A DNA stretch of 64,000 bases from Octopus sinensis (Eukaryota). Location of the stretch: contig NC_043025.1 of assembly GCF_006345805.1 (NCBI RefSeq), positions 9,796,001 through 9,860,000 of the forward strand, read 5' to 3'. A program made the position numbers and the translations under genes. The notes beneath the pieces are model-generated. The model saw only the letters and a program-made list of their open reading frames with translations. It was not told the DNA's origin and made no database searches. Shown here in pieces: positions 11,776 to 50,853 of this stretch (the stretch's first letter is position 1; each line of letters begins with the position of its first letter).

Positions 11776-12067
11776 AATATCATGGTGACTTTAATAATCT
11801 TCAACCACTTAGCATTCGGATTAGCCTGTCAAATATAATATTTATTTATTCACATGGTTTACAATTAATCATACCTTATCTTGTAGCCTCTACATTAATA
11901 TAATGCGATCGTTTCTTTTTAGGTTGACATTGTAGCATAGGTGTGAGAGGCCAGTTCTGTCTGGTTTGAACTGGATACAACTGGTTTAAATGCAAAAAAG
12001 TTAATAAGAAAATTACTGACCCTGGATATCAACGATATGGTTTCTACTCCGAAAGAATATCTTCAGT

Positions 12068-17972: not shown

Positions 17973-18330
17973 ATATGTACACACGTGACTTTGTTTACAT
18001 TTCTGAAGATAACAGAAACCCCTTTCTCCCTACCCTAACCCCAATGTATAAAAAAAAACACGGCATCGCCTTTATTTTCATACGAGACCTATCACAACAT
18101 TGATTGTATGGCGTAACTTCGATATAGGTACCGGATACATTTCAAGAAAGTGTTTTTTATATATATATATATATATGGGGGGGGCGGTTAGGGCTAGGGT
18201 TAGTGTTAGGGGTGGGAGAAAAGGGTTTCTGTTATCTTCAGAAATGTAAGCAAACCCACTTACGGTACCTATACCGAAGGATCGCCGGGTGTATTTATGT
18301 AATCATTATAGCTCAACGTTTATTATTATA

Positions 18331-18717
18331 CTAGCAGTATCGCCCGGCGTTGTTCGGGTTTGTAAGGGAAATAACTAAATAAGCATTTTTAGAGAGTAAT
18401 AACCAAAAAATGCATTAAAAATGGGAAAAAAATTATGGTAAATTTTTTTTTTAATCGTTGACTCATCGTAGACATTTTTAGAGAGTTACTTCCCTTATAT
18501 AATATCGAAAAAATGCATTAAAATGGAAAAAAATTATGGTAAATTTTTTTTTAAATCGTAGACTCATCGTAGACGCGCGCTAATACCCAGAAGGGCTCGA
18601 TATGAACCACGACTATAAGATACCCGATTTTGGTTAAACTGCACCGCAAAATGTGGGAGTAGTTAGGAATCTAAATCGTAGGGGACAGACACACAACTTC
18701 ACTTTTATATATAAAGA
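18331..18717 (-). mobile_element. Non-autonomous Helitron
   Basis: On minus: A|TCTTTATATAT...cccg/cggg hairpin...CTAG|T; no target-site duplication (TSD). Confidence 0.8.
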
Positions 18718-18897
18718 TTTACACATACGCATAAATGTTTACCTACTATATGATGACATTCGTACGCTGGGTCATAGAACGGTATACTTACATAGTGTAC
18801 CCCTCTCACTGATTTTATTTCCTCATAACTTCCAGCAAAATAGATATTTTAAAATTAATTTGTTTTTACAAATATACTTCAGATGTATTGGAATTTG

Positions 18898-19297
18898 GGA
18901 TCTTTTCCGTTTGAATGGCAGTTTTTTTAAAATAATTTCTAGGTAACTAAAAAATTTTAAACTTCCTATACTGGTAGAATGTGTTTATAAAAACATCTTT
19001 TTCTCTTGGCTTTATTGAGAAAATTCTATTGTTTGTAAGATATTTGTTGTTTTTTCTTCAATTTCTGCAATTTCAACCAATCAATGACGTCTATTGAGGT
19101 AAAAAAACATTCTGTGCCGTATGAATATGTCCCTCGTTTAGAAACAGATTGGGTTTATTTACATTTCGGAAGAAAAAAAAGATCCCCTAACCCTAAAACA
19201 GATTGAAATGCAATAGATCGATTCTAGGGTCATAATTATGGGTGACAATTTCATATGACACCGCTAGAAAAAGCTGCCGTTCAAACCGAAAAGATCC
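18898..19297. mobile_element. Same GGATC-TIR MITE family
   Basis: Both TIRs present; TSD not recognisable. Further fragments at 6210-6450 and 14795-15335. Confidence 0.72.
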
Positions 19298-19589
19298 ATA
19301 AAATGGAAGCATGCAAAAATAAAAACATCATTTTCCATCTTAATGCGAAATTTGTTTCATTTTGAAAAATAAAAATCTATTTTATAGTTTATTATCATTT
19401 ACATTTTGAACCATTTACATATTTTTGAGGGCATCAACCTGTAACAAAAAAATTTAGCCATTCTGTTGTAACAATACAATCCCAACATTCTGCAGAAACA
19501 ATAATTTGACATTCTACTACCAAAACAATATAATTTTGACACTTTGCCGTAACAATAAGATTCTGACATTTTCTATAACTTATATACTC

Positions 19590-20375
19590 TTTGCTCTTTT
19601 ATTTGTTTCATTATTTTGACTGCGGCCATGCTGGAGCACCGCCTTTAGTCGAGCAACTCGACCCCGGGACTTATTCTTTGTAAGCCCAGTACTTATTCTA
19701 TCGGTCTCTTTTTGCCGAACCGCTAGGTGACGGGGACGTAAACACACCAGCATCGGTTGTCAAGCAATGCTAGGGGAACAAACACAGACATAAATATATA
19801 TATATATATAGGAGTGGCTGTGTGGTAAGTAGCTTGCATACCAACCACATGGTTCAGGGTTCAGTCCCACTGCGTGGCACCTTGGGCAAGTGTCTTCTAC
19901 TATAGCCTCGGGCCGACCAAAGCCTTGTGAGTGGATTTGGTAGACGGAAACTGAGAGAAGCCCGTCGTATATATGTATATATATATATATGTGTATGTGT
20001 TTGTATATGTTTGTGTGTCTGTGTTTGTCCCCCCCCCCAACATCGCTTGACAATCGATGCTGGTGTGTTTACATCCCCGTAACTTAGCGGTTCGGCAAAA
20101 GAAACCGATAGAATAAGTATTAGGCTTACATAAGAATAAGTCCTGGGTTTGATTTGCTCGACTAAAAGGTGGTGCTCCAGCATGGCCACAGTAAAATGAC
20201 TGAAACAAGTAACAGAATATATATATACATATATACAACAGGCTTCTTTCAGTTTCCGTCTACCAAATCCACTCGGCCCGAGGCTATAGTAGAAGACACT
20301 TGCCCAAAATGCCACGCAGTGGGACTGAACCAGGAACTATGTGGTTGGTAAGCAAGCTACTTACCACACAGCCAC
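19590..20375. mobile_element. Adjacent SINE family A copies in both orientations
   Basis: Minus tail 19590-19790, plus copy 19810-20215, minus head 20225-20375. Confidence 0.75.
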
Positions 20376-20423
20376 AGACAACTGACCTTTGGAGAAGTGT
20401 TTCTCAACCTTTTTACCCTTGTG

Positions 20424-20861
20424 GGATCTTTTCGGTTTGAATGGCAGTTTTTTAAAATAATTTCCACGTAACTAAAAAATTTTAAACTTTGTATTCTGGT
20501 AGAATGTGTTTATAAAACATCTTTTTCTCTTGGCTTTATTGAGAAAATTCTATAGTTTGTAAGATATTAGTTGGGTTTTTTTCTTCAATTTCTGCAATTT
20601 CAACCAATCAATGACGTCTATTGAGGTAAAAAAAAAAAACATTCTGTGCCGTATGAATATGTCCCTCGTTTAAGAAACAGATTGGGTTTATTTACATTTC
20701 TGAAGAAAAAAATGATATCCTTCCCCCCACCCCTAACCCTGACTCTAACCCTAACCCTAAAATAGATTGAAATGCAATAGATCGATACTAGGGTCATAAT
20801 TATGGGTGATAATTTCATATGACACCACTAGAAAAAACTGCCGTTCAAACCGAAAAGATCC
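20424..20861. mobile_element. MITE with GGATC-terminal TIRs and 8-bp TSD CCCTTGTG (Merlin-like)
   Basis: TIRs GGATCTTTTCGGTTTGAATGGCAG / CTGCCGTTCAAACCGAAAAGATCC; TSD at 20416-20423 and 20862-20869. Confidence 0.8.
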
Positions 20862-21127
20862 CCCTTGTGTAACCCCTAAAATAAATTACATTTCTCAAGG
20901 AATCTCTGCACAAAAAAAAGTTATATACCAGATCTTTCTCATATTCTTTTCATCGTAGTTCACGGGGTAGATATCTGAGTGGTTTGTGTCAGGAAGGTCA
21001 TCCACCTGTAAAACTCCTGCCAAAACAGTAACAAAAGTCTGGTGCAGGCTTCGGCCTGGCCGGCTCTTGTACTGTCCCATCCATGCTAGCATGGAAGACA
21101 GACGTTAAACGATGAAGATGATATATA

Positions 21128-22213
21128 CGCCGGGCGAAATGCATAGCCGTATTTCGTCTCCGCCGAGGTCGACTTTGCCTTTCATCCTTCCGGGGTCGAT
21201 AAATTAAGTATCAGTTATGCACTGGGGTCGATGTAATCGACTTAATACCTATGTCTGTCCTTGTTTGTCCCCTCTATGTTTAGCCTCTTGTGGGTAGTAA
21301 AGAAATAGGTATTTCGTCTGCCGCTATGTTCTGAGTTCAAATTCTGCCGAAGTCGACTTTGCCTTTCATCCTTCCGGGGTCGATAAATTAAGTACCAGTT
21401 ACGCACTGGAGTCGATGTAATCGGCTTAATCCGTTTGTCTGTCCTTGTTTGTCCCCTCTATGTTTAGCCCCTTGTGGGCAATAAAGAAATAGGTATTTCT
21501 TCTGCCGCTATGTTCTGAGTTCAAATTCTGCCGAGGTCGACTTTGCCTTTCATCCTTCCGGGGTCGATAAATTAAGTACCAGTTACGCACTGGGGTCGAT
21601 GTAATCGACTTAATCCGTTTGTCTCTCCTTGTTTGTCCCCTCTATGTTTAGCCCCTTGTGGGTAGTAAAGAAATTGGTATTTCGTCTGCCACTATGTTCT
21701 GAATTCAAATTCCGCCGAGGTCGACTTTGGCTTTCATCCTTCCGGGGTCGATAAATTAAGTACCAGTTACGCACTGGGGTCGATGTAATCGACTTAATCC
21801 GTTTGTCTCTCCTTGTTTGTCCCCTCTATGTTTAGCCCCTTGTGGGTAGTAAAGAAATAGGTATTTCGTCTGCCACTATGTTCTGAATTCAAATTCCCCC
21901 GAGGTCGACTTTGGCTTTCATCCTTCCGGGGTCGATAAATTAAGTACCAGTTACGCACTGGGGTCAATGCAATCGACTTAATCCGTTTGTCTGTCCTTGT
22001 TTGTCCCCTCTATGTTTAGCCCCTTGTTGGTAGTAAAGAAATAGGTATTTCGTCTGCCGCTATGTTCTGAGTTCAAATTCCGCCGAGGTCGACTTTGCCT
22101 TTCATCCTTCCGGGGTCGATAAATTAAGTACCAGTTACGCACTGGGGTCGATGTAATCGACTTAATCCGTTTGTCCCCTCTATGTTAAGCCCCTTGTGGG
22201 TAGAAAAGAAACA
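21128..22213 (+). repeat. Tandem array (about 6 x 186 bp) of SINE family B body
   Basis: Unit tatttcgtctgccg...gcctttcatccttccggggtcgataaattaagtaccag...agccccttgtgggtagtaaagaaatagg. Confidence 0.85.
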
Positions 22214-26145: not shown

Positions 26146-26346
26146 ATGAATTTCGTGTATACTATTATATTTTTCTTGCAACTCCCCGTGTTGCTGTCTG
26201 CGGAGAAAACTTTTACGGCCGCCGTTTTTGAGCCGACGATACCAAGGAGATCATCCATGGGTTTGGTTTCGCGTGACAATGCCATCGAACAAATGAAGAA
26301 TATCCTGAAAGGATACGCTGAGGTTGCTGCAACGGCTAGCAAAAAG
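26146..26346 (+). CDS. Vanin/biotinidase-like gene copy A, coding exon 1 (67 aa: signal peptide plus TFTAAVFE...ASKK)
   Basis: Hydrophobic N-terminus followed by TFTAAVFE (compare VNN1 DTFTAAVYE). Ends AAG|GTTTGT, a phase-0 donor at 26347 that joins in frame to exon 2. Confidence 0.88.
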
Positions 26347-26804
26347 GTTTGTAAATATCTTACAGAAAGTATTATTGCTTTATTTTGACACATTCTACCA
26401 GTATACGAAGTTAACTAGAAATTGTTTGCCGTTCAAAAGGAAAAGATCCAAAAAGTATTTACTTTGTGTAAAAAAAATATGGCAATCTTTCGTCTCTAGT
26501 AGACCTTTCCGTCGATTTCCGTAAAAAACTTTTTTGTTTTTTACATATGGGCTTGCAGGAACTTTTGAAGTAATGAGAGCGAAAGAGACTAAGAGAAAGG
26601 ATACGCTGAGGTTGCTGCAAAGGCGAGCAAAACGGTTTGTAAATATCTTACAGAAAGTATTTTACAAATGCAGTCCGGTACTATTTAAGAAGAGTGGTCC
26701 CGGTGCGCGCACTCGCGTAGACGCGCATCCGCTAGAGCTAGTCGTGACTAATCGATCCTTACTTTCTGTTTTTTGTGTTTTATTTACTTTGTTTAAAAAA
26801 ATTG

Positions 26805-27095
26805 CCTTGTGAGTGGATTTGGTAGACGGAAACTGAAAGAAGCCCATCGTATATATGTATATGTATATATGCGTGTGTGTGTTTGTGTGTCTGTGTTTGT
26901 CCCCCCTAGCATTGCTTGACAACCGATGCTGGTGTGTTTACGTCCCCCCATTAGCGGTTCGGCAAAAGAGACCGATAGAATAAGTACTGGGCTTACAAAG
27001 AATAAGTCCCAGGGTCGATTTGCTCGACTAAAGGCGGTGCTCCAGCATGGCCACACTCAAATGACTGAAACAAGTAAAAGAGTAAAAGAGTAAAA
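26805..27095 (+). mobile_element. Headless SINE family A copy in copy A intron
   Basis: Body and tail match; no corresponding copy seen in the copy B intron. Confidence 0.75.
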
Positions 27096-27614
27096 AAGAG
27101 TAATTAATAAAAAAAAATTTAGGGTTAGGGTTAGGGAGGAGGTTTAGGGTTAGTTACAGGATGTTGTCTCAGTTTTAGACGCAGCAAACGATTTTAGCTC
27201 AAAAGAGAGCATAGGGTTGGTTAAAATTCGAAAAATTAAACAACGTTAAACAAACAAATTACAATTTTCTCAAGAAAGCCAAGAGAAAAAAATGTTTTTA
27301 TTTTCACACATTCTACCAGTATACGAAGTTTTAAAGTGTTTAGTTAACTAGAAATTGTCTGCCGTTCAAAAGGAAAAGATCCAAAAGGTATTTACTTTGT
27401 GTAAAAAAATATTTATTTTGTGTTTTATTTACTTTGCTAGGTAGTCGTGGTAAGATCGTCTAGTCACGACTAGCTAGCGCGAGTGCGCGCACCGGCGCCA
27501 TTCTTTTTAAGTAGTAGCTGCACTCCTTTGATATAAAACAAACATTAATATATTATGATAATAAGCTTTGTTCTTGCATACATTAATTTATTACTGGATA
27601 AGTACGACTTATAT

Positions 27615-27615
27615 G

Positions 27616-27646
<31 letters not shown>

Positions 27647-28503
27647 ACTCATCCAACATGCTAGAAACAGCAGCTATGTTCCTCATCAATACATAAATTT
27701 CATTATCAAAAATCCATTTAAAGGAAACTACAGGCTATTTTAAAGAAAACCTGAAAAAAAAACGGGATGGTCATGGATGGTTATTGGTCTGCTCGACTTG
27801 CGACAGACTCGTCTAAACACAAATGTCTGTCGATCTGCAAAATAAATCAAATCACCACTTGGAAAGGATCAGTAAATCTATTGTTGTTGTTACACACACA
27901 TATATATATATAGAAGCACTGCTCTGATCATATATATATATATATATTTTAGAGGGAAACCACTATGTGGACACCCTTATGCTAGAAATAGATCCGCTAT
28001 GGTCTTACCACTAAGAAATGTTCTCAAGAAAAATTTATATAGAAGCGCTGCTCTGGTCATATATATATATTATATATATATGTGTGTGTGTGTACTCATC
28101 CAACATGCTAGAAACAGCAGCTATGTTCCTCATCAATACATAAATTTCATTATCAAAAATCCATTTAAAGGAAACTACAGGCTATTTTAAAGAAAACCTG
28201 AAAAAAAAACGGGATGGTCATGGATGGTTATTGGTCTGCTCGACTTGCGACAGACTCGTCTAAACACAAATGTCTGTCGATCTGCAAAATAAATCAAATC
28301 ACCACTTGGAAAGGATCAGTAAATCTATTGTTGTTGTTACACACACATATATATATATAGAAGCACTGCTCTGATCATATATATATATATATATTTTAGA
28401 GGGAAACCACTATGTGGACACCCTTATGCTAGAAATAGATCCGCTATGGTCTTACCACTAAGAAATGTTCTCAAGAAAAATTTATATAGAAGCGCTGCTC
28501 TGG

Positions 28504-28508
<5 letters not shown>
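27615..28508 (+). repeat. Direct tandem duplication, 2 x 447 bp, in copy A intron
   Basis: Near-identical units; single copy in the copy B intron (about 49430-49880). Confidence 0.85.
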
Positions 28509-28540
<32 letters not shown>

Positions 28541-28545
<5 letters not shown>

Positions 28546-29052
28546 TTAGAGACAAAACCACTATTTTGCAAAACAAACAAGGAAAGACTTAATCAATACA
28601 TTAGAAGGTATAGGAATATCTTTCAAAGATGAATCCCAAAATAGCGGTTCTATCTTACCTGTAAATTCCATAATTTACGAAATTGAGGTATTACACTCAA
28701 TATACAAAATTATAAATATTAAATAATAATAAATATTAGGGAATAAATCCAAATTTACAGGGAAAAAATCAGATTTAGGATTAAATCCAATCTTATAGTA
28801 AAATATTATATAATATTAATTAGAGACAAAACCACTATTTTGCAAAACAAACAAGGAAAGACTTAATCAATACATTAGAAGGTATAGGAATATCTTTCAA
28901 AGATGAATCCCAAAATAGCGGTTCTATCTTACCTGTAAATTCCATAATTTACGAAATTGAGGTATTACACTCAATATACAAAATTATAAATATTAAATAA
29001 TAATAAATATTAGGGAATAAATCCAAATTTACAGGGAAAAAATCAGATTTAG
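28541..29052 (+). repeat. Direct tandem duplication, about 2 x 274 bp
   Basis: attaattagagacaaaacc at 28541 and 28815. Confidence 0.85.
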
Positions 29053-29152
29053 AAAATGGAGAAACATACTTAAATCAATCAAACATCAACCATCAGATAA
29101 TACCCAATCAATACTTTATTACACCATTACATAACAGCAAAGACATTATACA

Positions 29153-29183
<31 letters not shown>

Positions 29184-29298
29184 CAGTAGAATCTCGGTTT
29201 TCGAACGACTCTGATTACGAAGAAATCATACTTTATATATATCTATATCTAAAGCCCGATTTATTCGCGATCAGAGTTCGAAAAGCGAGGTACTACTG
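29184..29298. mobile_element. Tigger/pogo-like MITE (115 bp)
   Basis: TA|CAGTAGAATCTCGGTTTTCGAAC ... GTTCGAAAAGCGAGGTACTACTG. Confidence 0.6.
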
Positions 29299-29824
29299 TG
29301 TATGTATATATATATGTGTGTGTGTATGTATGTTATAGAAAATATGGGCTATTTACGAGTGCTCTTAGAGAGTCAATGGGAAAAAATACAGGACAGAGGA
29401 CATTCTTTTCTACTCTGGGCACAAGGCCCGAAATTTTGGGGGAGAGGGCAAGTCGATTAGATCGACTCCAGTTCGCAACTGGTACTTAATTTATCGACCC
29501 CGAAAGGATGAAAGGCAAAGTCGACCCCGGCGGAATTTGAACTCAGAACATATAAACAGACGAAATACCTATTTCTTTACTACCCACTAGGGGCCAAACA
29601 CAGAGGGGACAAACATACGGATTAAGCCGATTAAATCGACCCCAGTGCGTAACTGGTACTTAATTTATCGACCCCGAAAGGATGAAAGCAAAGTCGACCT
29701 CGGCGGAATTTGAACTCAGAACGTAACGGCAGACGAAATATCGCTAAGCATTTCACCTGGTGTTCTAACGATTCTGCCACCTTGCCTTATATTGACAAAT
29801 GCTTGTAGAATATGAGAGTGGTAC

Positions 29825-30255
29825 TCTTTTACTCTTTTACTTGTTTCAGTCATTTGAATGCGGCCATGCTGGAGCACCGCCTTTAGTCGATCAAATCGAC
29901 CCCGGGACTTATTCTTTGTAAGCCCAGTACTTATTCTATCGGTCTCTTTTTGCCGAACTGCTAAGTGACGGGGACGTAAACACACCAGCATCGGTTGTCA
30001 AGCAATGCTAGGGGGACAAACACAGACACACAACCCTCCCCCCACATATATATATACATATATACGACAGGCTTCTTTCAGTTTCCGTCTACCAAATCCA
30101 CTCACAATGCATTGGTCGGCCCGGGGCTATAGCAGAAGACACTTGCCCAAGATGCCAGGCAGTGGGACTGAACCCGGAACCATGTGGTTGGTAAGCAAGC
30201 TACTTACCACACAGCCACTCCTGTGCCTATACGACAGGCTTCTTTCAGTTTCCGT
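29825..30255 (-). mobile_element. SINE family A copy in copy A intron
   Basis: Reverse-complement match to the family. Confidence 0.78.
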
Positions 30256-30564
30256 CTATTCATATTGTATGGTATTCATATTGTACAAGCATTTATCAAT
30301 ATAATCCAAAGGCAGTGAGCTGGCAGAATCGTTAGCGAACCTTCAGCATTCCTGGCTTTAAGGGAACCCGGAAAGGCCTACCTGGAGGTTCAATCTTCCA
30401 ATTCCTTTTACAGAACTTTGAAAAACTGAAAGCCCGCTGCAATATGGGTGTGAAATATGTGTATGAATCTAAGAGGGAAATATGTTGAAAAAAATCATAA
30501 TTAATTGATTCTCCTGTATTTTTATCAGGAACTTTTCAGCACCCCCTTGTGTAAATATATATAC

Positions 30565-30671
30565 ATGTGTATGTATGTATGTATGTATGTATGTATGTAT
30601 GTATGTATGTATGTATGTATGTGTATGTATGTATGTTTGTATGTATGTATGTTTGTATGTATGTATGTATG

Positions 30672-30704
<33 letters not shown>

Positions 30705-31875
30705 TTGTATGTATGTATGTATGTATGTATGTATGTATGTATGTATGTATGTATGTATGTTGTATGTATGTATGTTTGTATGTATGTATGTATGTATGTA
30801 TGTATGTATGTATGTATGTATGTATGTTTGTATGTATGTATGTATGTATGTATGTATGTATGTATGTATGTATGTATGTTTGTATGTATGTATGTTTCTA
30901 TGTATGTATGTATGTATGTATGTATGTGTGTATGTATGTATGTATGTTTGTATGTATGTATGTTTGTATGTATGTATGTTTGTATGTATGTATTTTGTAT
31001 GTATGTATGTATGTATGTATGTATGTATGCATGTATGTATGTATGTATGTTTGTATGTATGTATGTATGTATGTATGTATGTATGTATGTATGTATGTAT
31101 GTATGTATGTATGTATGTATGTATGTATGTATGTATGTATGTATGTTTGTATGTATGTATGTTTGTATGTATGTATGTATGTATGTATGTATGTATGTAT
31201 GTATGTATGTATGTTTGTATGTATGTATGTTTGTATGAATGTATAAATGTATGTTTGTATGTATGTATGTATATATGTATGCATGAATGTATGTATGTAT
31301 ACATGTATGTATGTATGAATGTATGTATGTATGTATGTATGTATGTATGTATGTATATATGTATGCATGAATGTATGTATGTATGTATGTATGTATGTAT
31401 GTATGTATGTATGTATGTATGTATGTTTGTATGTATGTATGTTTGTATGTATGTATGTTTGTATGTATGTATGTATGTATGTATGTATGTATGTATGTAT
31501 GTATGTTTGTATGTATGTATGTTTGTATGTATGTATGTATGTTGTATGTATGTATGTATGTATGTTTGTATGTATGTATGTTTGTATGAATGTATAAATG
31601 TATGTTTGTATGTATGTATGTATATATGTATGCATGAATGTATGTATGAATACATGTATGTATGTATGAATGTATAAATGTATGTTTGTATGTATGTATG
31701 TATATATGTATGCATGAATGTATGTATGTATACATGTATGTATGTATGTATGTATGTATGTATGTATGTATGCATGAATGTATGTATGTATGTATGTATG
31801 TATGTATGTATGTATGTATGTATGTATGTATGCATGTATGTATGTATGCATGTATGTATGTATGTATGTATGTAT
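30565..31875 (+). repeat. (TATG)n microsatellite, about 1.3 kb
   Basis: Interrupted TATG array; source of the MYVC/HTYI ORFs. Confidence 0.97.
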
Positions 31876-31913
31876 TTTTGTTATTGATATGAATATTGCA
31901 TTTATATTTTCAG

Positions 31914-33263
31914 GGTGTGGATATTTTGGTATTTCCTGAAAACGGCCTTATTGCACATTTGGACAATATCACTCGCCTTAGTATTAGGAGCTTTCTCGAT
32001 CTTATACCAGAGCCTAACAAAGAGAAACCCTGGATTCCATGTAATGAACCTTATCTCTATCCAAGAACAGAAATTCAGCAAGTTATTAGCTGCATTGCCA
32101 AAATAAACAGGATTTATCTTGTAGTCAATGTCGGAGACATACAACCCTGCAATCGTTTAGAAGATGCAGACTGCCCTAAAGATGGACTATACCAATACAA
32201 CACAAATGTTGTGTATTCATCTGAAGGGGCCCTTGTTTCCAGATATCACAAAAAACATCTTTTGTTTGAGTACCATTACAACTCCCCCAAGATTGCAGAA
32301 TATGGAGTGTTTGATACCCCATTTGGCCGTTTTGCAAGCATCACAGGTTATGATATATACTTCAATGACACGCTAAATGAATTAGTAACGAAACATCAAG
32401 TTTCAAATATTCTTTTTCCAAATCAATGGCTTGACTTTCCTCCTTTCTATCTCTCATCCTTATTCCACAATTCAATTGCTAAAGCCTTTAATATAAACCT
32501 TATTTCTGCGAATATCAGAAAAGAGAACGGATATTACGCACGAGGCGGAAGCGGAATTTACACACCCTCAATAAATCGTTATGTATATAAACCCTTCAAC
32601 CCTGCTCCTCCAGATGAATATATTCAGTTACAAGTTAAAAATCTTGAAAAGTCAGAAAGAAAATTTCTTTTGCCGCCAAAACGTAAAGTTCCCAAATCAG
32701 ACAACCCCGATGTTAGAACAAAACGCATGGCATTATTTTTTAATGTATCTGCTGTGATGCTTCAGAAGGATTCGGGCGTTGTTAGTGTGTGTAAATATAA
32801 TGCATGTTGTTCGCTTCAGTATGAATTCATGTCTAAAAGAAATTCAGCGTTTAATATCAATTATATTTTAGCAATCAGAAACGAGGAATTTGTTGATGCT
32901 TTTGCCATGCAATCATGCATTTTATGTCCAATCAAAGATGACAAAATATCATGTCTGATGTCTTTACCGGCCGGTATCCCCGATGGAGATGTTAGCTTTC
33001 GCAAACTAAAGATGACGGCTCATAATTTTAATACTTCTTATTTTTTCCCCCATATTGCGACATTCAATTCAAGTACTTACGATATCAATACATCTTGGGA
33101 GCATGACAGAGGAGAAATAGAAATTACAGAACCTGTTAAAAAGGTTTTTAACGCTGTTATATTCGGAAGATTGTATCCCAATTCAGCTACAGCCACATTC
33201 GCAATATTTCCAGCCATTCTATTGATCTTGTTAAATTTAATATCGAAGGAACTTCTTGTTTAA
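31914..33263 (+). CDS. Vanin/biotinidase-like gene copy A, coding exon 2 (449 aa); catalytic Cys replaced by Gly; C-terminal GPI-type signal
   Basis: Acceptor tttatattttcag|GGT at 31913/31914. Motifs VFPE (Glu), YHKKHL (Lys), SITGYD in place of xCFD, GGSGIY, FGRLY, then a hydrophobic tail. Uninterrupted ORF; about 516 aa spliced. Confidence 0.92.
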   Translation, partial: GVDILVFPENGLIAHLDNITRLSIRSFLDLIPEPNKEKPWIPCNEPYLYPRTEIQQVISCIAKINRIYLVVNVGDIQPCNRLEDADCPKDGLYQYNTNVVYSSEGALVSRYHKKHLLFEYHYNSPKIAEYGVFDTPFGRFASITGYDIYFNDTLNELVTKHQVSNILFPNQWLDFPPFYLSSLFHNSIAKAFNINLISANIRKENGYYARGGSGIYTPSINRYVYKPFNPAPPDEYIQLQVKNLEKSERKFLLPPKRKVPKSDNPDVRTKRMALFFNVSAVMLQKDSGVVSVCKYNACCSLQYEFMSKRNSAFNINYILAIRNEEFVDAFAMQSCILCPIKDDKISCLMSLPAGIPDGDVSFRKLKMTAHNFNTSYFFPHIATFNSSTYDINTSWEHDRGEIEITEPVKKVFNAVIFGRLYPNSATATFAIFPAILLILLNLISKELLV

Positions 33264-34286: not shown

Positions 34287-35365
34287 GGCGAGCTGGCAGA
34301 GACGTTAGCACGCCGGGCGAAACGCTTAGCGGTATTTCGTCTGCCGTTACGTTCTGAGTTCAAATTCTGCCAAGGACCACTTTGCCTTTCATCCTTTTGG
34401 GGTCGATAAATTGAGTACCAGTTACGCGCTAGGATCGATATAATCGACTTAATCCGTTTGGCTGTCCTTGTTTCTCCTCTCTGTGTTTAGCCCCTTGTGG
34501 GTAGTAAAGAAATAGGTATTTCGTCTGCCGCTACGTTCTAAGTTCAAATTCCGCCGAGGACCACTTTGCCTTTCATCCTTTTGGGGTTGATAAATTAAGT
34601 ACCAGTTATGCACTAGGGTCGATATAATCGACTTATTCCGTTTGGCTGTCCTTGTTTGTCCTCTCTGTGTTTAGCCCCTTGTGGGTAGTAAAGAAATAGG
34701 TACTTCGTCTGCCGTTACGTTCTGAGTTCAAATTCCGCCGAGGACCACTTTGCCTCTCATCCTTTTGGGGTTGATAAATTAAGTACCAGTTACGCGCTAG
34801 GATCAATATAATCGACTTAATCCGTTTGGCTGTCCTTGTTTGTCTCCTCTGTGTTGAGCCCCTTGTGGGTAGTAAATAAATAGGTATTTCGTCTGTCTGT
34901 ATGTTCTGAATTGAAATTATGCTGTTGTCAACTTTGCCTTTCATCCTTTTGGGGTTGATAAATTAAGTACCAGTTATGCACTAGGGTCGATATAATCGAC
35001 TTATTCCGTTTGGCTGTCCTTGTTTGTCCTCTCTGTGTTTAGCCCCTTGTGGGTAGTAAAGAAATAGGTACTTCGTCTGCCGTTACGTTCTGAGTTCAAA
35101 TTCCGCCGAGGACCACTTTGCCTCTCATCCTTTTGGGGTTGATAAATTAAGTACCAGTTACGTACTCGGGTCGATATAATCGACTTAATCCGTTTGGCTG
35201 TCCTTGTTTGTCCCCTCTGTGTTTAGCCCCTTGTGGGTAGTATATAAATAGGTATTTCGTCTGTCTGTATGTTCTGAATTGAAATTCCACTGTCGTCAAC
35301 TTTGTCTTTCATCCTTTCGGGGTCGATAAATTAAGTACCAGGGAAATACTGGGGTCAATGTAATC
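34287..35365 (+). repeat. Tandem array (5 full units plus a partial, about 184 bp each) of SINE family B with one head
   Basis: Head ggcgagctggcagagacgttagcacgccggg followed by repeated body units. Confidence 0.85.
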
Positions 35366-35489
35366 GACTTACTCCACCTTACAAAATTTCAGACCTTGTT
35401 CCTATAGCAGAAAGGATCATTATTATTGTTATTTTTATTATTATTATTATTATTTTATTATTATTATTATTATTTTATTATTATTATTA

Positions 35490-37478: not shown

Positions 37479-37667
37479 ATATATTCTCCGTTTGCCAAAC
37501 TGGGAAAGAACAAAGAAAGAATCAAGAGATTTTTTTTAAGGAAAGGAGAAAAAAAACGAAATTTTACATGGAATCACAGGCATGACTGTGTGGTTTGGAA
37601 GTTTGCTTTACAACCACATGGTTTCAAGTTCAGTCCCACTACATGGCACCTTAAACAAATTATTTTT

Positions 37668-39140
37668 TTTACTACCCACAAGGGGCTAAACATAGAGAGG
37701 ACAAACAAGGACAGACAAACGGATTAAGTCGATTACATCGACCCCAGTGCGCAACTGGTACTTAATTTATCAACCCCGAAAGGATGAAAAGCAAAGTTGA
37801 CCTCGGCAGAATTTGAACTCAGAACGTAACGGCAGACGAAATACCTATTTCTTTACTACCCACAAGGGGCTAAACACAGAGAGGACAAACCAGGACAGAC
37901 AAACGGATTAAGTCGTTACATCGACCCCAGTGCGCAACTGGTACTTAATTTATCAACCCCGAAAGGATGAAAAGCAAAGTTGACCTCGGCAGAATTTGAA
38001 CTCAGAACGTAACGGCAGACGAATACCTCTTTTCTTTACTACCACCAGGGGCTAAACACAGAGAGGACAAACCAGGACAGACAAACGGATTAAGTCGATT
38101 ACATCGACCCCAGTGCGCAACTGGTACTTAATTTATCAACCCCGAAAGGATGAAAAGCAAAGTTGACCTCGGCAGAATTTGAACTCAGAACGTAACGGCA
38201 GACGAAATACCTATTCTTTACTACCCACAAGGGGCTAAACACAGAGAGGACAAACAAGGACAGACAAACGGATTAAGTCGATTACATCGACCCCAGTGCG
38301 CACTGGTACTTAATTATCAACCCCGAAAGGATGAAAAGAAAGTTGACCTCGGCAGAATTTGAACTCAGACGTAACGGCAGACGAAATACCTATTCTTTAC
38401 TACCCACAAGGGGCTAAAAACAGAGAGGACAACAAGGACAGACAAACGGATTAAGTCGTTAATCGACCCCAGTGCGCAACTGGTACTTAATTTATCAACC
38501 CCGAAGGATGAAAAGCAAAGTTGACCTCGGAAGGAGAATTTGAACTCAGAACGTAACGGCAGACGAAATACCTATTTCTTTACTACCCACAAGGGGCTAA
38601 ACACAGAGAGGACAAACAAGGACAGACAAACGGATTAAGTCGATTACATCGACCCCAGTGCGCAACTGGTACTTAATTTATCAACCCCGAAAGGATGAAA
38701 AGCAAAGTTGACCTCGGCAGAATTTGAACTCAGAACGTAACGGCAGACGAAATACCTATTTCTTTACTACCCACAAGGGGCTAAACACAGAGAGGACAAA
38801 CCAGGACAGACAAACGGATTAAGTCGATTACATCGACCCCAGTGCGCAACTGGTACTTAATTTATCAACCCCGAAAGGATGAAAAGCAAAGTTGACCTCG
38901 GCAGAATTTGAGAATCAGAACAGACGAACGCAGACGAATACCTATTTCTTTACTACCCACAAGGGGCTAAACACAGAGAGGACAAACAAGGACAGACAAA
39001 CGGATTAAGTCGATTACATCGACCCCAGTGCGCAACTGGTACTTAATTTATCGACCCCGAAAGGACGAAAGGCAAAGTCAACCTCGGCAGAATTTGAACT
39101 CAGGCATTTCGCCCGGCGTGCCAATGTTTGCCAGCTCACC
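37668..39140 (-). repeat. Tandem array (8 x about 183 bp) of SINE family B
   Basis: Eight ctacccacaaggggctaaac-type anchors at a regular period. Confidence 0.88.
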
Positions 39141-41474: not shown

Positions 41475-41593
41475 TATATATATGTGTGGTATATATATAT
41501 ATATATTATATATACATTATATATACATATATAATATACATATCTAATATATATATATATACATATATATACATACATATACATATATATAAC

Positions 41594-41654
<61 letters not shown>

Positions 41655-41947
41655 CATTATATATACATATATATATACATATATATATATATAACATATA
41701 CATATATACATATATACATATATATACATATATATATATACATATATACATATATATACATATATATACATATATATATATATACATATATATACATATA
41801 TATATATATTATATACATATATATACATATATATATATATATATACATATATATACATACATATATATACATATATATACATACATATATATACATATAT
41901 AATACATATATATATATATATATAATATATATATCATATATATATAT

Positions 41948-41978
<31 letters not shown>

Positions 41979-42205
41979 TACACATATATATATATATATA
42001 TATATACATATATATATACATATATATACATATATATATACATATATATACATATATATATATATACAATACATATATATACATATATATACATATATAT
42101 ACACATATATAACATATATATACATATATATACATATATATATACATATATATACATATATATACACATATATATATCTACATATATAATATATATATTA
42201 TTTAC

Positions 42206-42247
<42 letters not shown>

Positions 42248-42260
42248 TTATATATATATT
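41475..42260. repeat. (TA)n/(TACA) low-complexity array
   Basis: Direct inspection; similar tracts at 40270-40445 and 40660-40912. Confidence 0.95.
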
Positions 42261-45037: not shown

Positions 45038-46396
45038 TTAAACAAGAAGTTCCTTCGATATTAAATTTAACAAGATTAATAGAATGGCTGGAAATATTGC
45101 GAATGTGGCTGTAGCTGAATTGGGATACAATCTTCCGAATATAACAGCATTAAAAACCTTTTTAACAGGTTCTGTAATTTCTATTTCTCCTCTGTCGTGC
45201 TTCCAAGATGTATTTATATCGTAAGTACTTGAATTAAAAGTCGCAATATGGGGGAAAAAATAAGAAGTATTAAAATTATGAGCTGTCATCTTTAATTTCC
45301 GAAAGCTAACTTCTCCATCGGGGATACCGGCCGGTAAAGACATCAGACATGACATTTTAAAATCTTTGATTGGACATAAAATGCATGATTGCATGTCTAC
45401 ACCCTCTGGATTAGTCAAATCAACAGATTCCTCGTTGGTGATTGCTAAAATATAATTGATATTAAACACTGAGGTTCTGTTAGACATGAATTCATACTGA
45501 AGTGAACAACATGCATTATATTTACACACGCTAACAACGCCCGAATACTTATGAAGCATCACAGCAGATACAGGGAAAAGATTTGTCATGGTTGCTGTTT
45601 TAACGTCGGGGTTGTCTGATTCGGGAACCTTACGTATTGGGGGGCAGGGAAATGTCCTTTTTGACTTTTCAAGATTTTTAACTTGTAACTGAATATATTC
45701 ATCTGAAGGAGCAGGGTTTAAGGGGTTATATACATAACGATTTATTGAGGGTGTGTATATTCCGCTTCCGCCTCGTACGAAATTGTTTATTTTGATATTC
45801 GCAGAAATAAGGTTTATATTAAAGGCTTTGGCAATTGAATTGTGGAATAAGGACGAGAAAAAGAAAGGAGGGGTATCAAACCATAGATTTGGAAAAAGAA
45901 TATTTGAAACTTGATGTTTCATCACTAATTCATTTAGCGAATCATTGAAGTATATATCAAAACATACGATGCTTGCAAAACGGCCAAATGGGGTGTCAAA
46001 CACTCCATATTCTGCAATCTTGGGGGAGTTGTAATAAGGCTCATAAAAAAGATGTTTTTTGTGATATCTAGAAACAAGGGCCCCTTCAGATGAATAGACA
46101 ACATTCGTGTTATATTGGTAACGTCCATCGTAAGGGCAGTTTGCATCATCTGTACGATTGCAGGGTTGTATGTCTCCGACATTGACTACAAGATAAATCT
46201 TGTTCTTTTTGGCAATGCAGCTAATAACTTGCTGAATTTCTGTTCTTGGATAGAGATAAGGTTCATCACATGGAATCCACGGTTTCTCTTTGTTAGGCTC
46301 TGGTATAAGATCGAGAAAGTTCCTAATACCAAGACGAGTGACACCGTCCAAATGTGCAATAAGACCGTTTTCAGGAAATACCAAAATATCCACACC
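45038..46396 (-). CDS. Vanin/biotinidase-like gene copy B, coding exon 2 (452 aa); intact Glu-Lys-Cys triad; C-terminal GPI-type signal
   Basis: Same acceptor as copy A. Motifs VFPE, YHKKHL and SIVCFD (TGT at 45964-45962), FGRLY plus hydrophobic tail. About 520 aa spliced. Confidence 0.93.
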   Translation of the reverse strand, partial: GVDILVFPENGLIAHLDGVTRLGIRNFLDLIPEPNKEKPWIPCDEPYLYPRTEIQQVISCIAKKNKIYLVVNVGDIQPCNRTDDANCPYDGRYQYNTNVVYSSEGALVSRYHKKHLFYEPYYNSPKIAEYGVFDTPFGRFASIVCFDIYFNDSLNELVMKHQVSNILFPNLWFDTPPFFFSSLFHNSIAKAFNINLISANIKINNFVRGGSGIYTPSINRYVYNPLNPAPSDEYIQLQVKNLEKSKRTFPCPPIRKVPESDNPDVKTATMTNLFPVSAVMLHKYSGVVSVCKYNACCSLQYEFMSNRTSVFNINYILAITNEESVDLTNPEGVDMQSCILCPIKDFKMSCLMSLPAGIPDGEVSFRKLKMTAHNFNTSYFFPHIATFNSSTYDINTSWKHDRGEIEITEPVKKVFNAVIFGRLYPNSATATFAIFPAILLILLNLISKELLV

Positions 46397-46435
46397 CTGA
46401 AAATATAAATGCAATATTCATATCAACAACAAAAA

Positions 46436-46473
46436 TACATACACATACATACATACATACATACATACATACA

Positions 46474-46507
<34 letters not shown>

Positions 46508-46620
46508 CATGCACGCATGCATGCATGCATACATACATACATACATACATACATACATACATGCACGCATGCATGCATGCATACATACATACATACATAC
46601 ATACACACACATGTATATAT
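46436..46620 (-). repeat. (TATG)n microsatellite, about 185 bp (paralog of 30565-31875)
   Basis: (CATA)n on plus, just upstream of the copy B acceptor. Confidence 0.95.
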
Positions 46621-47881
46621 ACTTACAAAAGGCAGCAAGCTGGCAGAAACGTTAGCACGCCGGGCGAAATGCGTAGCAGTATTTCGTCTGCCGTTACGTT
46701 CTGAGTTCAAATTCCGGTGAAGTCGACTTTGCCTTTCATCCTTTCGGGGTCGATAAATTAAGTACCAGTTACGAACTGGGGTCGATGGAATGGAATTAAT
46801 CCATTTGTCTGTCCTTGTTTGTCCCCTCTATGTTTAGTCCCTTGTGGGTAGTAAAGAAATATATATATTTACACAAGGGGGTACTGAAAAGTTACTGGGT
46901 TTGGGTAAAATAAAAAAACATGAGGATCAGTTAATTATGATTTTTTTCAACATATTTCCCTCTTAGATTCATACACATATTTCACACCCATATTGCAGCG
47001 GGTTTTCAGTTTTTCAAAGTTCTGTAAAAGGAATTGGAAGATTGAACCTCCAGGTAGGCCTTTCCGGGTTCCCTTAAAGCCAGGAACGCTGAAGGTTCGC
47101 TAACGATTCTGCCAGCTCACTGCCTTTGGATTATATTGATAAATGCTATATATATATATAGTAAGAAAGATTAGCAGTTTATATGAAACTGTTAATCATA
47201 TAAACTGCTAATCTTTCTTAATTCTATTCTAAATTTAATATGTAACACTATTCCCTTAATGATACATTTATTTTCACTATAAATTTTGAATAAGTAAAAT
47301 TCCCCTACAAATTGCTATTGAATTTATTTGACCTCTAGATGTTGACCTAAATTCTTTCTTACAATATATAAACATAAGTTAAAATAGAAACAATAATAAA
47401 TAAAAAACCTTCTATTCTAGTGTTACCCTTAACTTTCTTACTGTATCTTCCTCTACTGATAACCGATGACCCCTTTAGTGTTTTCCTTTGATCTCTCTGT
47501 ATTCTTTATCCTACCATTAACTCTGTGAGTTTCTAAGTTCAGAGCTGGCGGTGGTCAAACTTACTGTTCTTTTATGAATTTAAGATTCCTTCAACACTGA
47601 CCTAGATTTTCTGTCACCACAGAAACAGACTAACCTTTGTCTGTGGAATCTTTATTCCCTCTTACTCCCCCACTCCTTTCCTCCCATAATGTCCTTTACT
47701 TTGGTTCCAGTATCTTTCCTCATGTCTCCTGGAACTTATATCTGCATCTTTATGGATGGATTTACCTTCTCAGAGGAGTTAATAATCATTTTAAAAACAT
47801 TTTTTAAATAACTGTGCATCGTTGGAAAACATATAAAGTCTGCTTATTACCTTACTTCAAATTCATAGAACTCACTCTGAA

Positions 47882-50649: not shown

Positions 50650-50853
50650 CTTTTTGCTGGCCCTTGCAGCAACCTCAGCGTATCCTTTTAGGACATGTTT
50701 CATTTGTTCGATGGCATTGTCGCGCGAAACCAAACCCATGGATGATCTCCTTGGTATCGTCGGCTCAAAAACGGCGGCCGTAAAAGTTTTCTCCGCCGCA
50801 GACAGCAACACGGGTAGTTGCAAGAAAAATATAATAGTATACACGAAATTCAT
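50650..50853 (-). CDS. Vanin/biotinidase-like gene copy B, coding exon 1 (68 aa)
   Basis: MNFVYTIIFFLQLPVLLSAAEKTFTAAVFE...ASKK with a phase-0 GT donor at 50649; near-identical to copy A exon 1. Confidence 0.88.

What the first reader, a model, noticed from the sequence alone, without database searches (positions are those of the whole stretch)
32257..32910. Divergence between the paralogs clusters in predicted pocket segments, while the C-terminal region is under purifying selection
Seen (manual alignment): about 60 amino-acid substitutions and 2 indels in exon 2, concentrated at LLFEYH/LFYEPY after the catalytic Lys, TGY/VCF, QWLDFPPFYL/LWFDTPPFFF, RKENGYYA/KINNFV, KRMALFFN/ATMTNLFP and FVDAFA/SVDLTNPEGVD. 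In the last 104 codons I count 9 synonymous and only 2 non-synonymous differences. Inference: these segments correspond to substrate-pocket and base-domain loops of VNN1. The pattern argues against copy A being a decaying pseudogene and suggests adaptive re-sculpting of the ligand pocket.
Basis: partly seen in the sequence, partly recalled or inferred. Interest (0 to 1): 0.7.

Follow-up and report, generated by a model that had tools for sequence, protein, structure and literature searches.

The report
Octopus vanin duplicate lacking catalytic cysteine
One of two neighbouring, recently duplicated Octopus sinensis pantetheinase (vanin) genes has replaced its catalytic cysteine with glycine and changed quickly around the old active site, while selection keeps its C-terminal part intact, so it looks like a retained non-catalytic enzyme copy rather than a pseudogene or a proven case of adaptive pocket redesign.

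Summary
Exon 2 of the two inverted Octopus sinensis vanin/pantetheinase paralogs differs by 61 substitutions and 2 in-frame indels at the named motifs. The last 104 codons carry 9 synonymous and 2 non-synonymous differences.

With four outgroup genes, 47 of 68 differing columns fall on copy A and 16 on copy B. The A-lineage changes are clustered (p&lt;1e-4).

Omega on the A branch is about 1.2 over alignment columns 1-350. That is not different from 1 and far above the background of 0.18. It is 0.03 over the last 113 codons (omega=1 rejected, p=4e-5). Synonymous divergence is uniform, so gene conversion does not explain the conserved end.

Copy A has Gly212 where VNN1 has Cys211. It is the only Gly among 116 homologs (111 Cys, 4 Ser).

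A branch-site test favours positive selection (p=4e-4), but the signal disappears once the 13 multi-nucleotide codons are masked.

An independent Cys-less O. bimaculoides paralog changed seven of the same otherwise invariant sites.

Verdict: copy A is not a pseudogene and is probably a retained non-catalytic vanin. Adaptive re-sculpting is possible but unproven. Interest is moderate.

The parts
26146..26346 (+). Copy A exon 1 (67 codons: Met, signal-peptide-like N-terminus, first strand of the nitrilase domain). GT donor follows at 26347.
   Evidence: tblastn of the annotated N-terminus of P0004, 100% identity. Start and splice context checked.
26347..31913 (+). Copy A intron (phase 0). It contains a (TGTA)n array of about 1.3 kb at 30568-31875 and ends in ...ttttcag.
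   Evidence: Colinear non-coding blocks are 93-96% identical to the copy B intron.
31914..33263 (+). Copy A exon 2 (449 codons plus stop): rest of the CN_hydrolase domain, the Vanin_C base domain and a hydrophobic C-terminal tail.
   Evidence: ORF list. Pfam PF00795 scores 27.2 bits and PF19018 61.9 bits. Identical to P0004, 'pantetheinase-like [Octopus sinensis]'.
31938..31940 (+). Copy A Glu76 codon (GAA), equivalent to VNN1 catalytic Glu79. Retained.
   Evidence: Alignment to 4CYF. Invariant column E76. Family column is 107 Glu and 9 gaps.
32250..32252 (+). Copy A Lys180 codon (AAA), equivalent to VNN1 catalytic Lys178. Retained.
   Evidence: (116 of 116 Lys).
32257..32910 (+). The finding's span: from the loop after the catalytic Lys to the 5-codon deletion in the base domain. 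It holds most of the clustered A-lineage changes.
32346..32348 (+). Copy A Gly212 codon (GGT) at the nucleophile position (VNN1 Cys211; copy B Cys213, TGT). It is flanked by Val to Thr (ACA) and Phe to Tyr (TAT), giving four nucleotide changes within 9 nt.
   Evidence: Family column is 111 Cys, 4 Ser and 1 Gly.
32949..33260 (+). Last 104 codons of copy A (second half of the base domain plus the hydrophobic tail ...FAIFPAILLILLNLISKELLV). Under strong purifying selection.
   Evidence: Sd 9, Nd 2. A-branch omega 0.033-0.037, with omega=1 rejected at p<1e-4. Polarised counts are 1 non-synonymous and 7 synonymous.
45038..46396 (-). Copy B exon 2 (452 codons plus stop). It keeps the full Glu-Lys-Cys triad; the Cys213 codon is at 45962-45964.
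   Evidence: 100% identical to P0001, 'pantetheinase [Octopus sinensis]'.
50650..50853 (-). Copy B exon 1 (68 codons).

Best explanation
The window holds a convergent (tail-to-tail) inverted pair of two-exon vanin/biotinidase-family genes from Octopus sinensis. The duplication arose in the O. sinensis lineage after its split from O. bimaculoides.

Copy B behaves as the conserved enzyme. It keeps the Glu-Lys-Cys triad and has omega of about 0.3.

Copy A lost the thiol nucleophile (Cys to Gly212). Since then its nitrilase domain and the first half of its base domain have accepted amino-acid changes at about the neutral rate. These changes cluster in the loops that follow the strands carrying the catalytic Lys and the former Cys, in the next two strand-end loops, and in the first base-domain strands.

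The second half of the base domain, the C-terminal hydrophobic (GPI-signal-like) tail, all structural cysteines and the reading frame remain under strong purifying selection.

The most likely reading is that copy A is a retained, secreted or membrane-anchored, catalytically dead vanin (a pseudoenzyme). Its maintained function would depend on the base domain and anchor, possibly with ligand binding without hydrolysis in the altered pocket.

Shown here: the gene structure, the polarity of the changes, the loss of the nucleophile, the regional omega values and the clustering. Inferred: loss of activity, the fold-based placement of the clusters around the pocket, and the nature of the retained function.
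For: Species and identity: copy B is 100% identical to P0001 and copy A equals P0004, both from O. sinensis.

Tree: (((A,B),O. bimaculoides P0002),P0003,(P0005,Argonauta)) is best. Trees that place A with P0005, or B with P0002, are worse by 100 and 45 lnL units. Pairwise dS is 0.149 for A-B against 0.25-0.26 to P0002.

Polarity: 47 differing columns fall on A, 16 on B and 5 are ambiguous. The relative-rate test gives chi2 10.3, p=0.0013.

Branch model:
- Background omega is 0.18-0.19.
- A-branch omega over columns 1-350 is 1.19 (against background p=8e-9; against 1 p=0.62).
- A-branch omega over the last 113 codons is 0.033 (against 1 p=4e-5).

Polarised counts on the A lineage are 51 non-synonymous and 11 synonymous in columns 1-350, against 1 and 7 afterwards (Fisher p=1.8e-4).

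Nucleophile: alignment to VNN1 4CYF puts copy B Cys213 on VNN1 Cys211, and copy A has Gly there. The family column is 111 Cys, 4 Ser and 1 Gly. The CN_hydrolase Pfam score drops from 43.1 bits in B to 27.2 in A.

Intactness: splice sites, start and stop are intact, and 10 of 10 shared cysteines are kept. The chance of no premature stop after 91 random substitutions is 0.039.

Fold: the AlphaFold2 model has pLDDT 87 and pTM 0.85, with TM 0.85-0.87 to VNN1 structures.

Parallelism: the independent O. bimaculoides paralog P0005 (Ser at the nucleophile position) changed 7 of the 20 otherwise invariant sites that A changed (Fisher p=6e-4). These include the same Phe to Tyr next to the nucleophile. 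Francis et al. 2017 (PMC5541922) reported that change as recurrent in cephalopod Cys-less members.

Established knowledge: the Cys of the nitrilase-superfamily Glu-Lys-Cys triad forms the thioacyl intermediate. Cys to Ala and Cys to Ser mutants are used as inactive substrate traps, for example PDB 6YPA and 5H8K, both listed.
Against: No transcript or protein evidence for copy A was available. Its protein cluster has one member from one genomic contig.

Loss of activity is inferred and was not measured.

Omega near 1 is an average. It could hide a mix of constrained sites and positively selected sites, as the branch-site alternative suggests (7.8% of sites at omega 8.5).

A-lineage substitutions still avoid the most conserved family positions to some degree. 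Mean conservation is 0.53 at substituted sites against 0.64 at unchanged sites (p=0.013), so relaxation is not complete.

Non-coding A-B divergence (K 0.03-0.05) is lower than dN in the middle of exon 2 (0.11-0.16). If introns were taken as the neutral standard, this would point to positive selection. However, synonymous sites also run about twice as fast as alignable non-coding DNA in the O. sinensis to O. bimaculoides comparison.

Only six sequences were used.
Confidence: 0.6

Rival explanations
1. Adaptive re-sculpting. After duplication, positive selection drove the clustered replacements in the former active-site loops and the first base-domain strands, so that copy A binds or processes a new ligand. 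Loss of the Cys would be part of that shift.
For: The branch-site test with A as foreground gives LRT 11.05, p about 4e-4, with 7.8% of sites at omega 8.5. The same test gives nothing for B or P0005. Omega on the A branch is 1.5 for columns 121-350. Clustering is strong. Sites were hit in parallel in the independent Cys-less paralog P0005, including identical Phe to Tyr, Phe to Leu and Pro to Leu changes. dN in the middle of exon 2 exceeds non-coding divergence. N-glycosylation sequons have turned over: NRT148 and NRT374 were lost, NIT85 and NVS344 gained.
Against: The branch-site signal vanishes (LRT 0, omega2 = 1.0) when the 13 codons with 2 or more nucleotide changes are masked. Such codons are a recognised source of false positives for this test (established knowledge: Venkat, Hahn and Thornton 2018). 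Two clusters sit next to indels and may be single complex mutational events. Omega=1 cannot be rejected for any sub-region of columns 1-350. Parallel hits are also expected if losing the nucleophile relaxes the same neighbouring residues.
Confidence: 0.25
2. Young unprocessed pseudogene. Copy A is already non-functional, and the open frame and conserved C-terminus are chance survivals.
For: The nucleophile is lost. Omega is about 1.2 over three quarters of exon 2. No transcript evidence was found.
Against: A-branch omega is 0.033 in the last 113 codons (p=4e-5 against 1), with 7 synonymous and 1 non-synonymous changes there. The chance of no stop after 91 random substitutions is 0.039. Both indels are multiples of three. 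All shared cysteines and both splice sites are intact.
Confidence: 0.08
3. Gene conversion. The near-identical C-terminal protein sequence reflects recent homogenisation between the inverted copies, not selection.
For: Inverted paralogs about 12 kb apart are good conversion substrates. The non-coding arms are 93-96% identical.
Against: Synonymous divergence in the C-terminal part (dS 0.14-0.16, nine sites spread over 32949-33260) equals that of the rest of exon 2. Four-fold-site divergence is compatible with the non-coding calibration.
Confidence: 0.02
4. Copy A is still a hydrolase and uses another nucleophile or activated water, for example the new Tyr213 or Thr211.
For: Glu76, Lys180 and the second Glu186 are retained. 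Francis et al. 2017 suggest that Ser variants may remain active.
Against: Gly has no side chain. Thr at position -1 is simply the family consensus (89 of 116). No nitrilase-superfamily enzyme is known to work without the Cys or Ser (established knowledge). A-to-I RNA editing cannot turn GGU into a Cys or Ser codon.
Confidence: 0.05

Closest known systems
Human vanin-1 (VNN1, pantetheinase; PDB 4CYF, 4CYG, 4CYY, 7SLV)
   Same: Both have the two-domain architecture of CN_hydrolase plus Vanin_C base domain. Sequence E-value is 2.5e-53 for copy B. The copy A model superposes with TM 0.85-0.87. Both have a signal-like N-terminus and a hydrophobic C-terminal tail like the GPI signal of VNN1. Glu and Lys of the triad are conserved.
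   Different: Copy A has Gly at Cys211. Both octopus copies have Leu where VNN1 has the interface residue Glu249 that is needed for activity (alignment; Glu249 role from PMC4834066). Identity is only about 30%.
Cephalopod symplectin/biotinidase-like proteins, group 2 (Francis et al. 2017, PMC5541922)
   Same: The nearest named non-octopod relative is Vampyroteuthis 'Symplectin/biotinidase-like protein 2', at 51% identity. That paper already describes lineage-specific duplications in cephalopods. It also describes repeated, independent replacement of the catalytic Cys, accompanied by Phe to Tyr at the next residue. Copy A shows the same Phe to Tyr.
   Different: The reported replacements are Cys to Ser, which may keep a nucleophile. 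Copy A has Gly, which was not seen in any of the other 115 homologs examined. The duplication is younger than the O. sinensis to O. bimaculoides split.
O. bimaculoides paralog P0005 (annotated 'pantetheinase', 522 aa, chromosome CM046606.1)
   Same: It is also a Cys-less member (Ser-Tyr at the nucleophile position) with elevated omega. It was altered at 7 of the 20 otherwise invariant sites that copy A changed.
   Different: It is an older, independent duplicate on a different chromosome from the copy B ortholog P0002. It has Ser and not Gly. No O. sinensis ortholog appeared in the protein search.
Pseudoenzymes in general (for example pseudophosphatases and pseudoproteases)
   Same: A catalytic residue is lost while the fold, the disulfide cysteines and part of the sequence stay under purifying selection.
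   Different: No non-catalytic function has been shown for any vanin-family member in the papers searched. The role of copy A is inferred only.

Membership tests
Vanin/biotinidase (pantetheinase) family | N-terminal CN_hydrolase (nitrilase-fold) domain followed by a Vanin_C base domain | tested here: met
   Pfam PF00795 and PF19018 both score above their cut-offs in both copies. The copy A model matches VNN1 with TM 0.85-0.87.
Vanin/biotinidase (pantetheinase) family | Catalytic Glu (VNN1 E79) and Lys (K178) | tested here: met
   Copy A has Glu76 and Lys180; copy B has Glu77 and Lys181.
Vanin/biotinidase (pantetheinase) family | Catalytic Cys nucleophile (VNN1 C211) | tested here: not met
   Copy A has Gly212 (GGT, window 32346-32348). 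Copy B has Cys213. The family column is 111 Cys, 4 Ser and 1 Gly. Copy A is therefore a homolog by descent but fails the active-enzyme definition.
Vanin/biotinidase (pantetheinase) family | Secretory signal and C-terminal GPI-type hydrophobic signal | tested here: inconclusive
   The N-terminus MNFVYTIIFFLQLPVLLSA and the C-terminus FAIFPAILLILLNLISKELLV are hydrophobic, and they form helices at 2-11 and 501-515 in the model. No signal-peptide or GPI predictor was available.
Vanin/biotinidase (pantetheinase) family | Pantetheinase or biotinidase activity | not testable with these tools
   This needs an enzyme assay.
Cephalopod symplectin/biotinidase-like group 2 (Francis et al. 2017) | Groups with named group 2 sequences rather than with group 3 or the symplectin group | tested here: inconclusive
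   The best named non-octopod hit is Vampyroteuthis 'protein 2' at 51% identity. A named group 3 sequence (Octopoteuthis) is at 31%. No full family tree with the paper's groups was built.
Pseudoenzyme | An essential catalytic residue is missing while the gene stays under purifying selection | tested here: met
   Gly212 replaces the nucleophile. A-branch omega is 0.033 in the last 113 codons, with omega=1 rejected at p=4e-5. The frame, splice sites and cysteines are intact.
Pseudoenzyme | Expressed protein that lacks the ancestral activity | not testable with these tools
   No expression data were available and no assay could be run.
Unprocessed pseudogene | Disabling mutations, or omega about 1 along the whole gene | tested here: not met
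   There are no stops or frameshifts. Omega is strongly heterogeneous, 1.19 against 0.033 (Fisher p=1.8e-4).

The most novel reading that the evidence does not exclude
Cephalopod vanin genes may repeatedly follow one evolutionary route: duplicate, remove the thiol nucleophile, and remodel the same few pocket residues. The residues involved are Lys+4 and Lys+5, the nucleophile and the residue after it, and the residue after the conserved Trp. The products would be non-hydrolytic ligand-binding ectoproteins, much as symplectin became a photoprotein in this family. Copy A would be the youngest and most extreme case (Gly), caught within one species lineage next to its still-enzymatic parent, and its pocket changes would be driven by positive selection.
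Probability: 0.2. Interest if true: 0.65.

Novelty: new variant of a known kind. Interest (0 to 1): 0.4.

Why it matters
If copy A is expressed, it is a very young and datable example of an enzyme turning into a non-catalytic protein. The active parent gene lies 12 kb away and a one-to-one ortholog exists in O. bimaculoides, which makes a clean natural experiment on what changes first after a nucleophile is lost. The parallel changes in an independent Cys-less octopus paralog, together with the recurrent Cys/Phe to Ser/Tyr pattern already described in squids, suggest a repeatable path in a family that produced the squid photoprotein symplectin. For annotation, 'pantetheinase-like' should not be read as pantetheinase activity. 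For the scan, this finding is a solid observation with an over-stated adaptive interpretation.

Tried and rejected
(1) Gene conversion as the cause of the conserved C-terminus. Rejected because dS is uniform along exon 2.

(2) Copy A as the ortholog of the O. bimaculoides Cys-less paralog P0005, with later homogenisation. Rejected because that tree is 100 lnL units worse, and the shared states use different codons at two of the sites.

(3) Exon 2 being anomalously more diverged than the introns. Raw identity suggested this: 89.7% for the exon block against 93-96% for non-coding blocks. Calibration against O. bimaculoides shows that synonymous sites run about twice as fast as alignable non-coding DNA in both comparisons. 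The four-fold-site interval (0.053-0.148) includes the calibrated expectation of about 0.07. This was left as a minor caveat.

(4) Compensated frameshifts as the cause of the clusters. The nucleotide alignments do not show simple plus-one/minus-one pairs. Only GAG-CCTTAT to GAG-TACCAT could be a 2-nt insertion plus a 2-nt deletion.

(5) Micro-conversion from a group 3 (Ser-Tyr) paralog. Judged unlikely at about 34% protein identity. Not tested further.

(6) Residue-level pocket mapping on VNN1. Literature searches found no open paper that lists pocket-lining residues, and model coordinates cannot be accessed. Only secondary-structure placement could be given.

(7) A search for described vanin pseudoenzymes found nothing relevant.
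Full report
**What is in the window**

The 64-kb window is eukaryotic. ORF listing shows two long, similar reading frames on opposite strands: 31896-33263 (+) and 45038-46414 (-). A protein search identifies them as Octopus sinensis genes. The minus-strand copy (copy B) is 100% identical to 'pantetheinase [Octopus sinensis]' (P0001, 520 aa). The plus-strand copy (copy A) is 'pantetheinase-like [Octopus sinensis]' (P0004, 516 aa).

Each gene has two exons:
- Copy A: 26146-26346 and 31914-33263.
- Copy B: 50853-50650 and 46396-45038.

Both have identical ...ttttcag|GGT acceptors and AAG|gtttgt donors. The genes are convergent, with their 3' ends about 12 kb apart. They sit in an inverted duplication whose non-coding arms are 93-96% identical. 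Both proteins carry CN_hydrolase and Vanin_C domains. Their best solved relative is human vanin-1 (E = 2.5e-53).

**Check of the observation**

A global alignment of the exon 2 products gives 61 substitutions, a 2-residue indel and a 5-residue indel. In the last 104 codons (32949-33260) Nei-Gojobori counts are exactly 9 synonymous and 2 non-synonymous differences (dS 0.141, dN 0.008).

A sliding window gives pairwise omega of 0.4-1.0 over most of the exon and 0.05-0.07 at the end. Clustering exceeds chance: 29 neighbour pairs at most 2 residues apart, against 15 expected, in 0 of 20,000 permutations.

**Polarising the changes**

I fetched the coding DNA of four relatives:
- O. bimaculoides P0002.
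- O. bimaculoides P0005.
- An octopod sequence from the Logan assembly SRR11869391 (P0003).
- Argonauta hians P0006.

I then built a codon alignment. Trees that make A the ortholog of P0005, or B the sister of P0002, are worse by 100 and 45 lnL units. Pairwise dS agrees: 0.149 for A-B against 0.25-0.26 to P0002, in all three sub-regions. The duplication is therefore specific to the O. sinensis lineage.

By outgroup comparison, 47 of the 68 differing columns changed on the A lineage, 16 on B, and 5 are ambiguous. The relative-rate test gives p = 0.0013. A-lineage substitutions are clustered (17 neighbour pairs against 6.5 expected). B-lineage substitutions are not. The A-lineage clustering survives removal of the two indel-adjacent clusters.

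The 'TGY/VCF' segment is the nucleophile elbow. The HMMER alignment to 4CYF puts copy B Cys213 on VNN1 Cys211, copy B Lys181 on Lys178 and copy B Glu77 on Glu79. The chain numbering is offset by 7 from UniProt numbering.

Copy A has Gly212 (GGT, 32346-32348) at the Cys position. Val to Thr and Phe to Tyr flank it, giving four nucleotide changes within nine bases. Among 116 family members the column is 111 Cys, 4 Ser and 1 Gly, and the Gly is copy A. Glu76, Lys180 and the second Glu186 are retained. Copy A's CN_hydrolase Pfam score falls to 27 bits from 43 in copy B.

In the nitrilase superfamily this Cys forms the covalent thioacyl intermediate, and Cys to Ala or Ser mutants are standard inactive forms (established knowledge; examples appear among the fold hits). 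A-to-I RNA editing cannot recreate a Cys or Ser codon from GGU. Copy A is therefore very unlikely to be a pantetheinase.

**Selection on the A branch**

Branch-model results:

| Partition | omega, A branch | Test against 1 | Test against background |
|---|---|---|---|
| Whole exon 2 | 0.73 | p = 0.29 | p = 2e-6 |
| Columns 1-350 (nitrilase domain, linker, first base-domain strands) | 1.19 | p = 0.62 | p = 8e-9 |
| Last 113 codons | 0.033 | p = 4e-5 | p = 0.043 |

For the whole exon, background omega is 0.19 and the B branch is 0.31.

Parsimony-polarised counts agree. The A lineage has 51 non-synonymous and 11 synonymous changes in columns 1-350, against 1 and 7 afterwards (Fisher p = 1.8e-4). 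Because dS is the same in both parts, gene conversion does not explain the conserved end.

Several other results argue against a pseudogene:
- The frame is open.
- Both indels are multiples of three.
- Splice sites are intact.
- All ten cysteines shared with copy B are kept.
- The chance of escaping a stop after 91 random substitutions is 0.039.

**Is the divergence adaptive?**

A branch-site test (model A type) with copy A as foreground is formally significant: LRT 11.05, p about 4e-4, with 7.8% of sites at omega 8.5. It is null for copy B and for P0005. The sites that drive it (columns 83, 121, 145, 274 and 281) are all codons with two or three nucleotide changes.

Copy A has 13 such codons and copy B has 4. 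When those 13 codons are masked the LRT is 0.00 and omega2 is 1.0. Multi-nucleotide changes are a known cause of false positives in this test. Masking them is also conservative, because it removes any true positives. Two clusters lie next to indels and may each be one complex mutational event.

A-lineage substitutions hit family-conserved positions more often than B-lineage substitutions do (mean conservation 0.53 against 0.38, p = 0.03). They still hit them somewhat less than a uniform draw would (unchanged sites 0.64, p = 0.013). This fits strong but incomplete relaxation.

Non-coding divergence between the arms (K 0.03-0.05) is below dN in mid-exon. Calibration against O. bimaculoides shows that synonymous sites generally evolve about twice as fast as alignable non-coding DNA here. 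The four-fold-site interval overlaps the calibrated expectation. The adaptive claim is therefore possible but not demonstrated.

**Where the clusters lie**

An AlphaFold2 model of copy A, built from a 29-sequence alignment, is confident (pLDDT 87, pTM 0.85). It matches VNN1 structures with TM 0.85-0.87.

| A-lineage cluster | Residues in copy A | Position in the model |
|---|---|---|
| LLFEYH | 184-188 | Loop after strand 174-179, which ends at Lys180. Flanks the second Glu186. |
| TGY | 211-213 | Strand-to-helix elbow after strand 205-209. |
| QWLDFPPFY | 238-247 | Loop after strand 232-236. |
| RKENGYYA | 269-276 | Loop after strand 262-266. |
| KRMALFFN | 335-344 | First two base-domain strands. 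|
| Deletion plus AFA | 393-398 | Base-domain loop. |

In the nitrilase fold the active site is formed by loops at the C-terminal ends of the strands (established knowledge), so placing the first four clusters around the pocket is reasonable. I could not measure distances because model coordinates are not exposed. No open paper that lists VNN1 pocket residues was found.

**Parallel evolution**

O. bimaculoides P0005 is an older, independent duplicate on another chromosome. It has Ser-Tyr at the nucleophile position. Of 275 columns invariant in the four Cys-bearing sequences, A changed 20, P0005 changed 24, and 7 are shared (Fisher p = 6e-4). The shared columns are 24, 118, 119, 146, 147, 174 and 256. 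Three of them reached identical derived states: Phe to Tyr after the nucleophile, Phe to Leu after the conserved Trp, and Pro to Leu.

Francis et al. 2017 (PMC5541922) already reported that cephalopod family members lost the Cys several times independently, always to Ser, and usually together with this Phe to Tyr. Copy A fits that recurrent pattern but goes further, to Gly. Parallel hits fit either shared relaxation of residues that served the thiol chemistry or a shared new function.

**Verdict**

Copy A is a young, intact, selectively maintained duplicate that has lost the catalytic nucleophile. It is most likely a non-catalytic vanin whose conserved role depends on the second half of the base domain and the C-terminal anchor (confidence about 0.6). 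Adaptive remodelling of the pocket is a live alternative (about 0.25). A pseudogene is unlikely (about 0.08).

The gene itself is already annotated, and loss of the nucleophile is a known theme in cephalopod members of the family. The Gly state, the very recent origin beside an active parent, and the sharply bipartite selection pattern make it a new variant of a known kind, of moderate interest. Expression data, population data, multi-hit-aware selection tests, 3D mapping and a simple enzyme assay would settle it.

Noticed in passing
window 12068-13669 (-): A 533-aa ORF made of about 16 tandem C2H2 zinc fingers (84-bp period). It is typical of the octopus zinc-finger gene expansion and is unrelated to the vanin pair.
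   Followed up: no
window 30568-31875 vs 46429-46627: A (TGTA)n microsatellite just upstream of exon 2 is about 1.3 kb (328 copies) in the copy A intron. At the homologous place in copy B it is only about 200 bp, so the array has expanded greatly since the duplication.
   Followed up: partly
window 21159-22175, 34331-35375, 37664-39103, 51779-52878: Arrays of a 183-184-bp satellite or SINE-like unit flank both gene copies and fill part of the roughly 10-kb spacer between the inverted arms. They may have mediated the inverted duplication.
   Followed up: no
window 53018-53318: A degenerate TTAGGG-like (GGGTTA) interstitial array, resembling telomeric repeats.
   Followed up: no
window 41490-42259: A (TA)n tract of about 770 bp (GC 18% over 40-42 kb) lies in the spacer between the two copies.
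   Followed up: no
copy A Leu320 (TTG) and copy B Cys319 (TGC); alignment column 257: A Trp in the motif F-P-W-P-P is conserved in O. bimaculoides P0002 and P0005, in P0003 and in Argonauta. It has been replaced independently in both O. sinensis copies, to Leu in A and to Cys in B.
   Followed up: partly
window 33180-33260 (copy A) and the homologous end of copy B; L001-L004: The C-terminal hydrophobic tail, a presumed cleaved GPI signal, ends in LNLISKELL. This motif is conserved across Octopus species and Argonauta and carries no amino-acid change between A and B. That is unusually strong conservation for a GPI signal peptide and hints at another role, such as a transmembrane anchor or a sorting motif.
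   Followed up: no
copy A residues 85, 148, 344, 374 (window exon 2): N-glycosylation sequons have turned over. Copy A lost NRT148 and NRT374 and gained NIT85 and NVS344. Two of the branch-site 'selected' codons (Thr to Leu at column 83, Pro to Asn at column 281) are exactly these sequon changes.
   Followed up: partly
L002 (O. bimaculoides CM046606.1) 10001-21519: O. bimaculoides carries an older vanin paralog (P0005) with Ser-Tyr at the nucleophile position and elevated omega, on a different chromosome from the copy B ortholog. No O. sinensis ortholog of it appeared in the protein search.
   Followed up: partly
both copies, residue aligned to VNN1 Glu249 (SSLFHNS): The buried interface residue Glu249, which is required for VNN1 activity, is Leu in all the octopus sequences. 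Domain coupling in this cephalopod group must therefore differ from human vanin-1.
   Followed up: no
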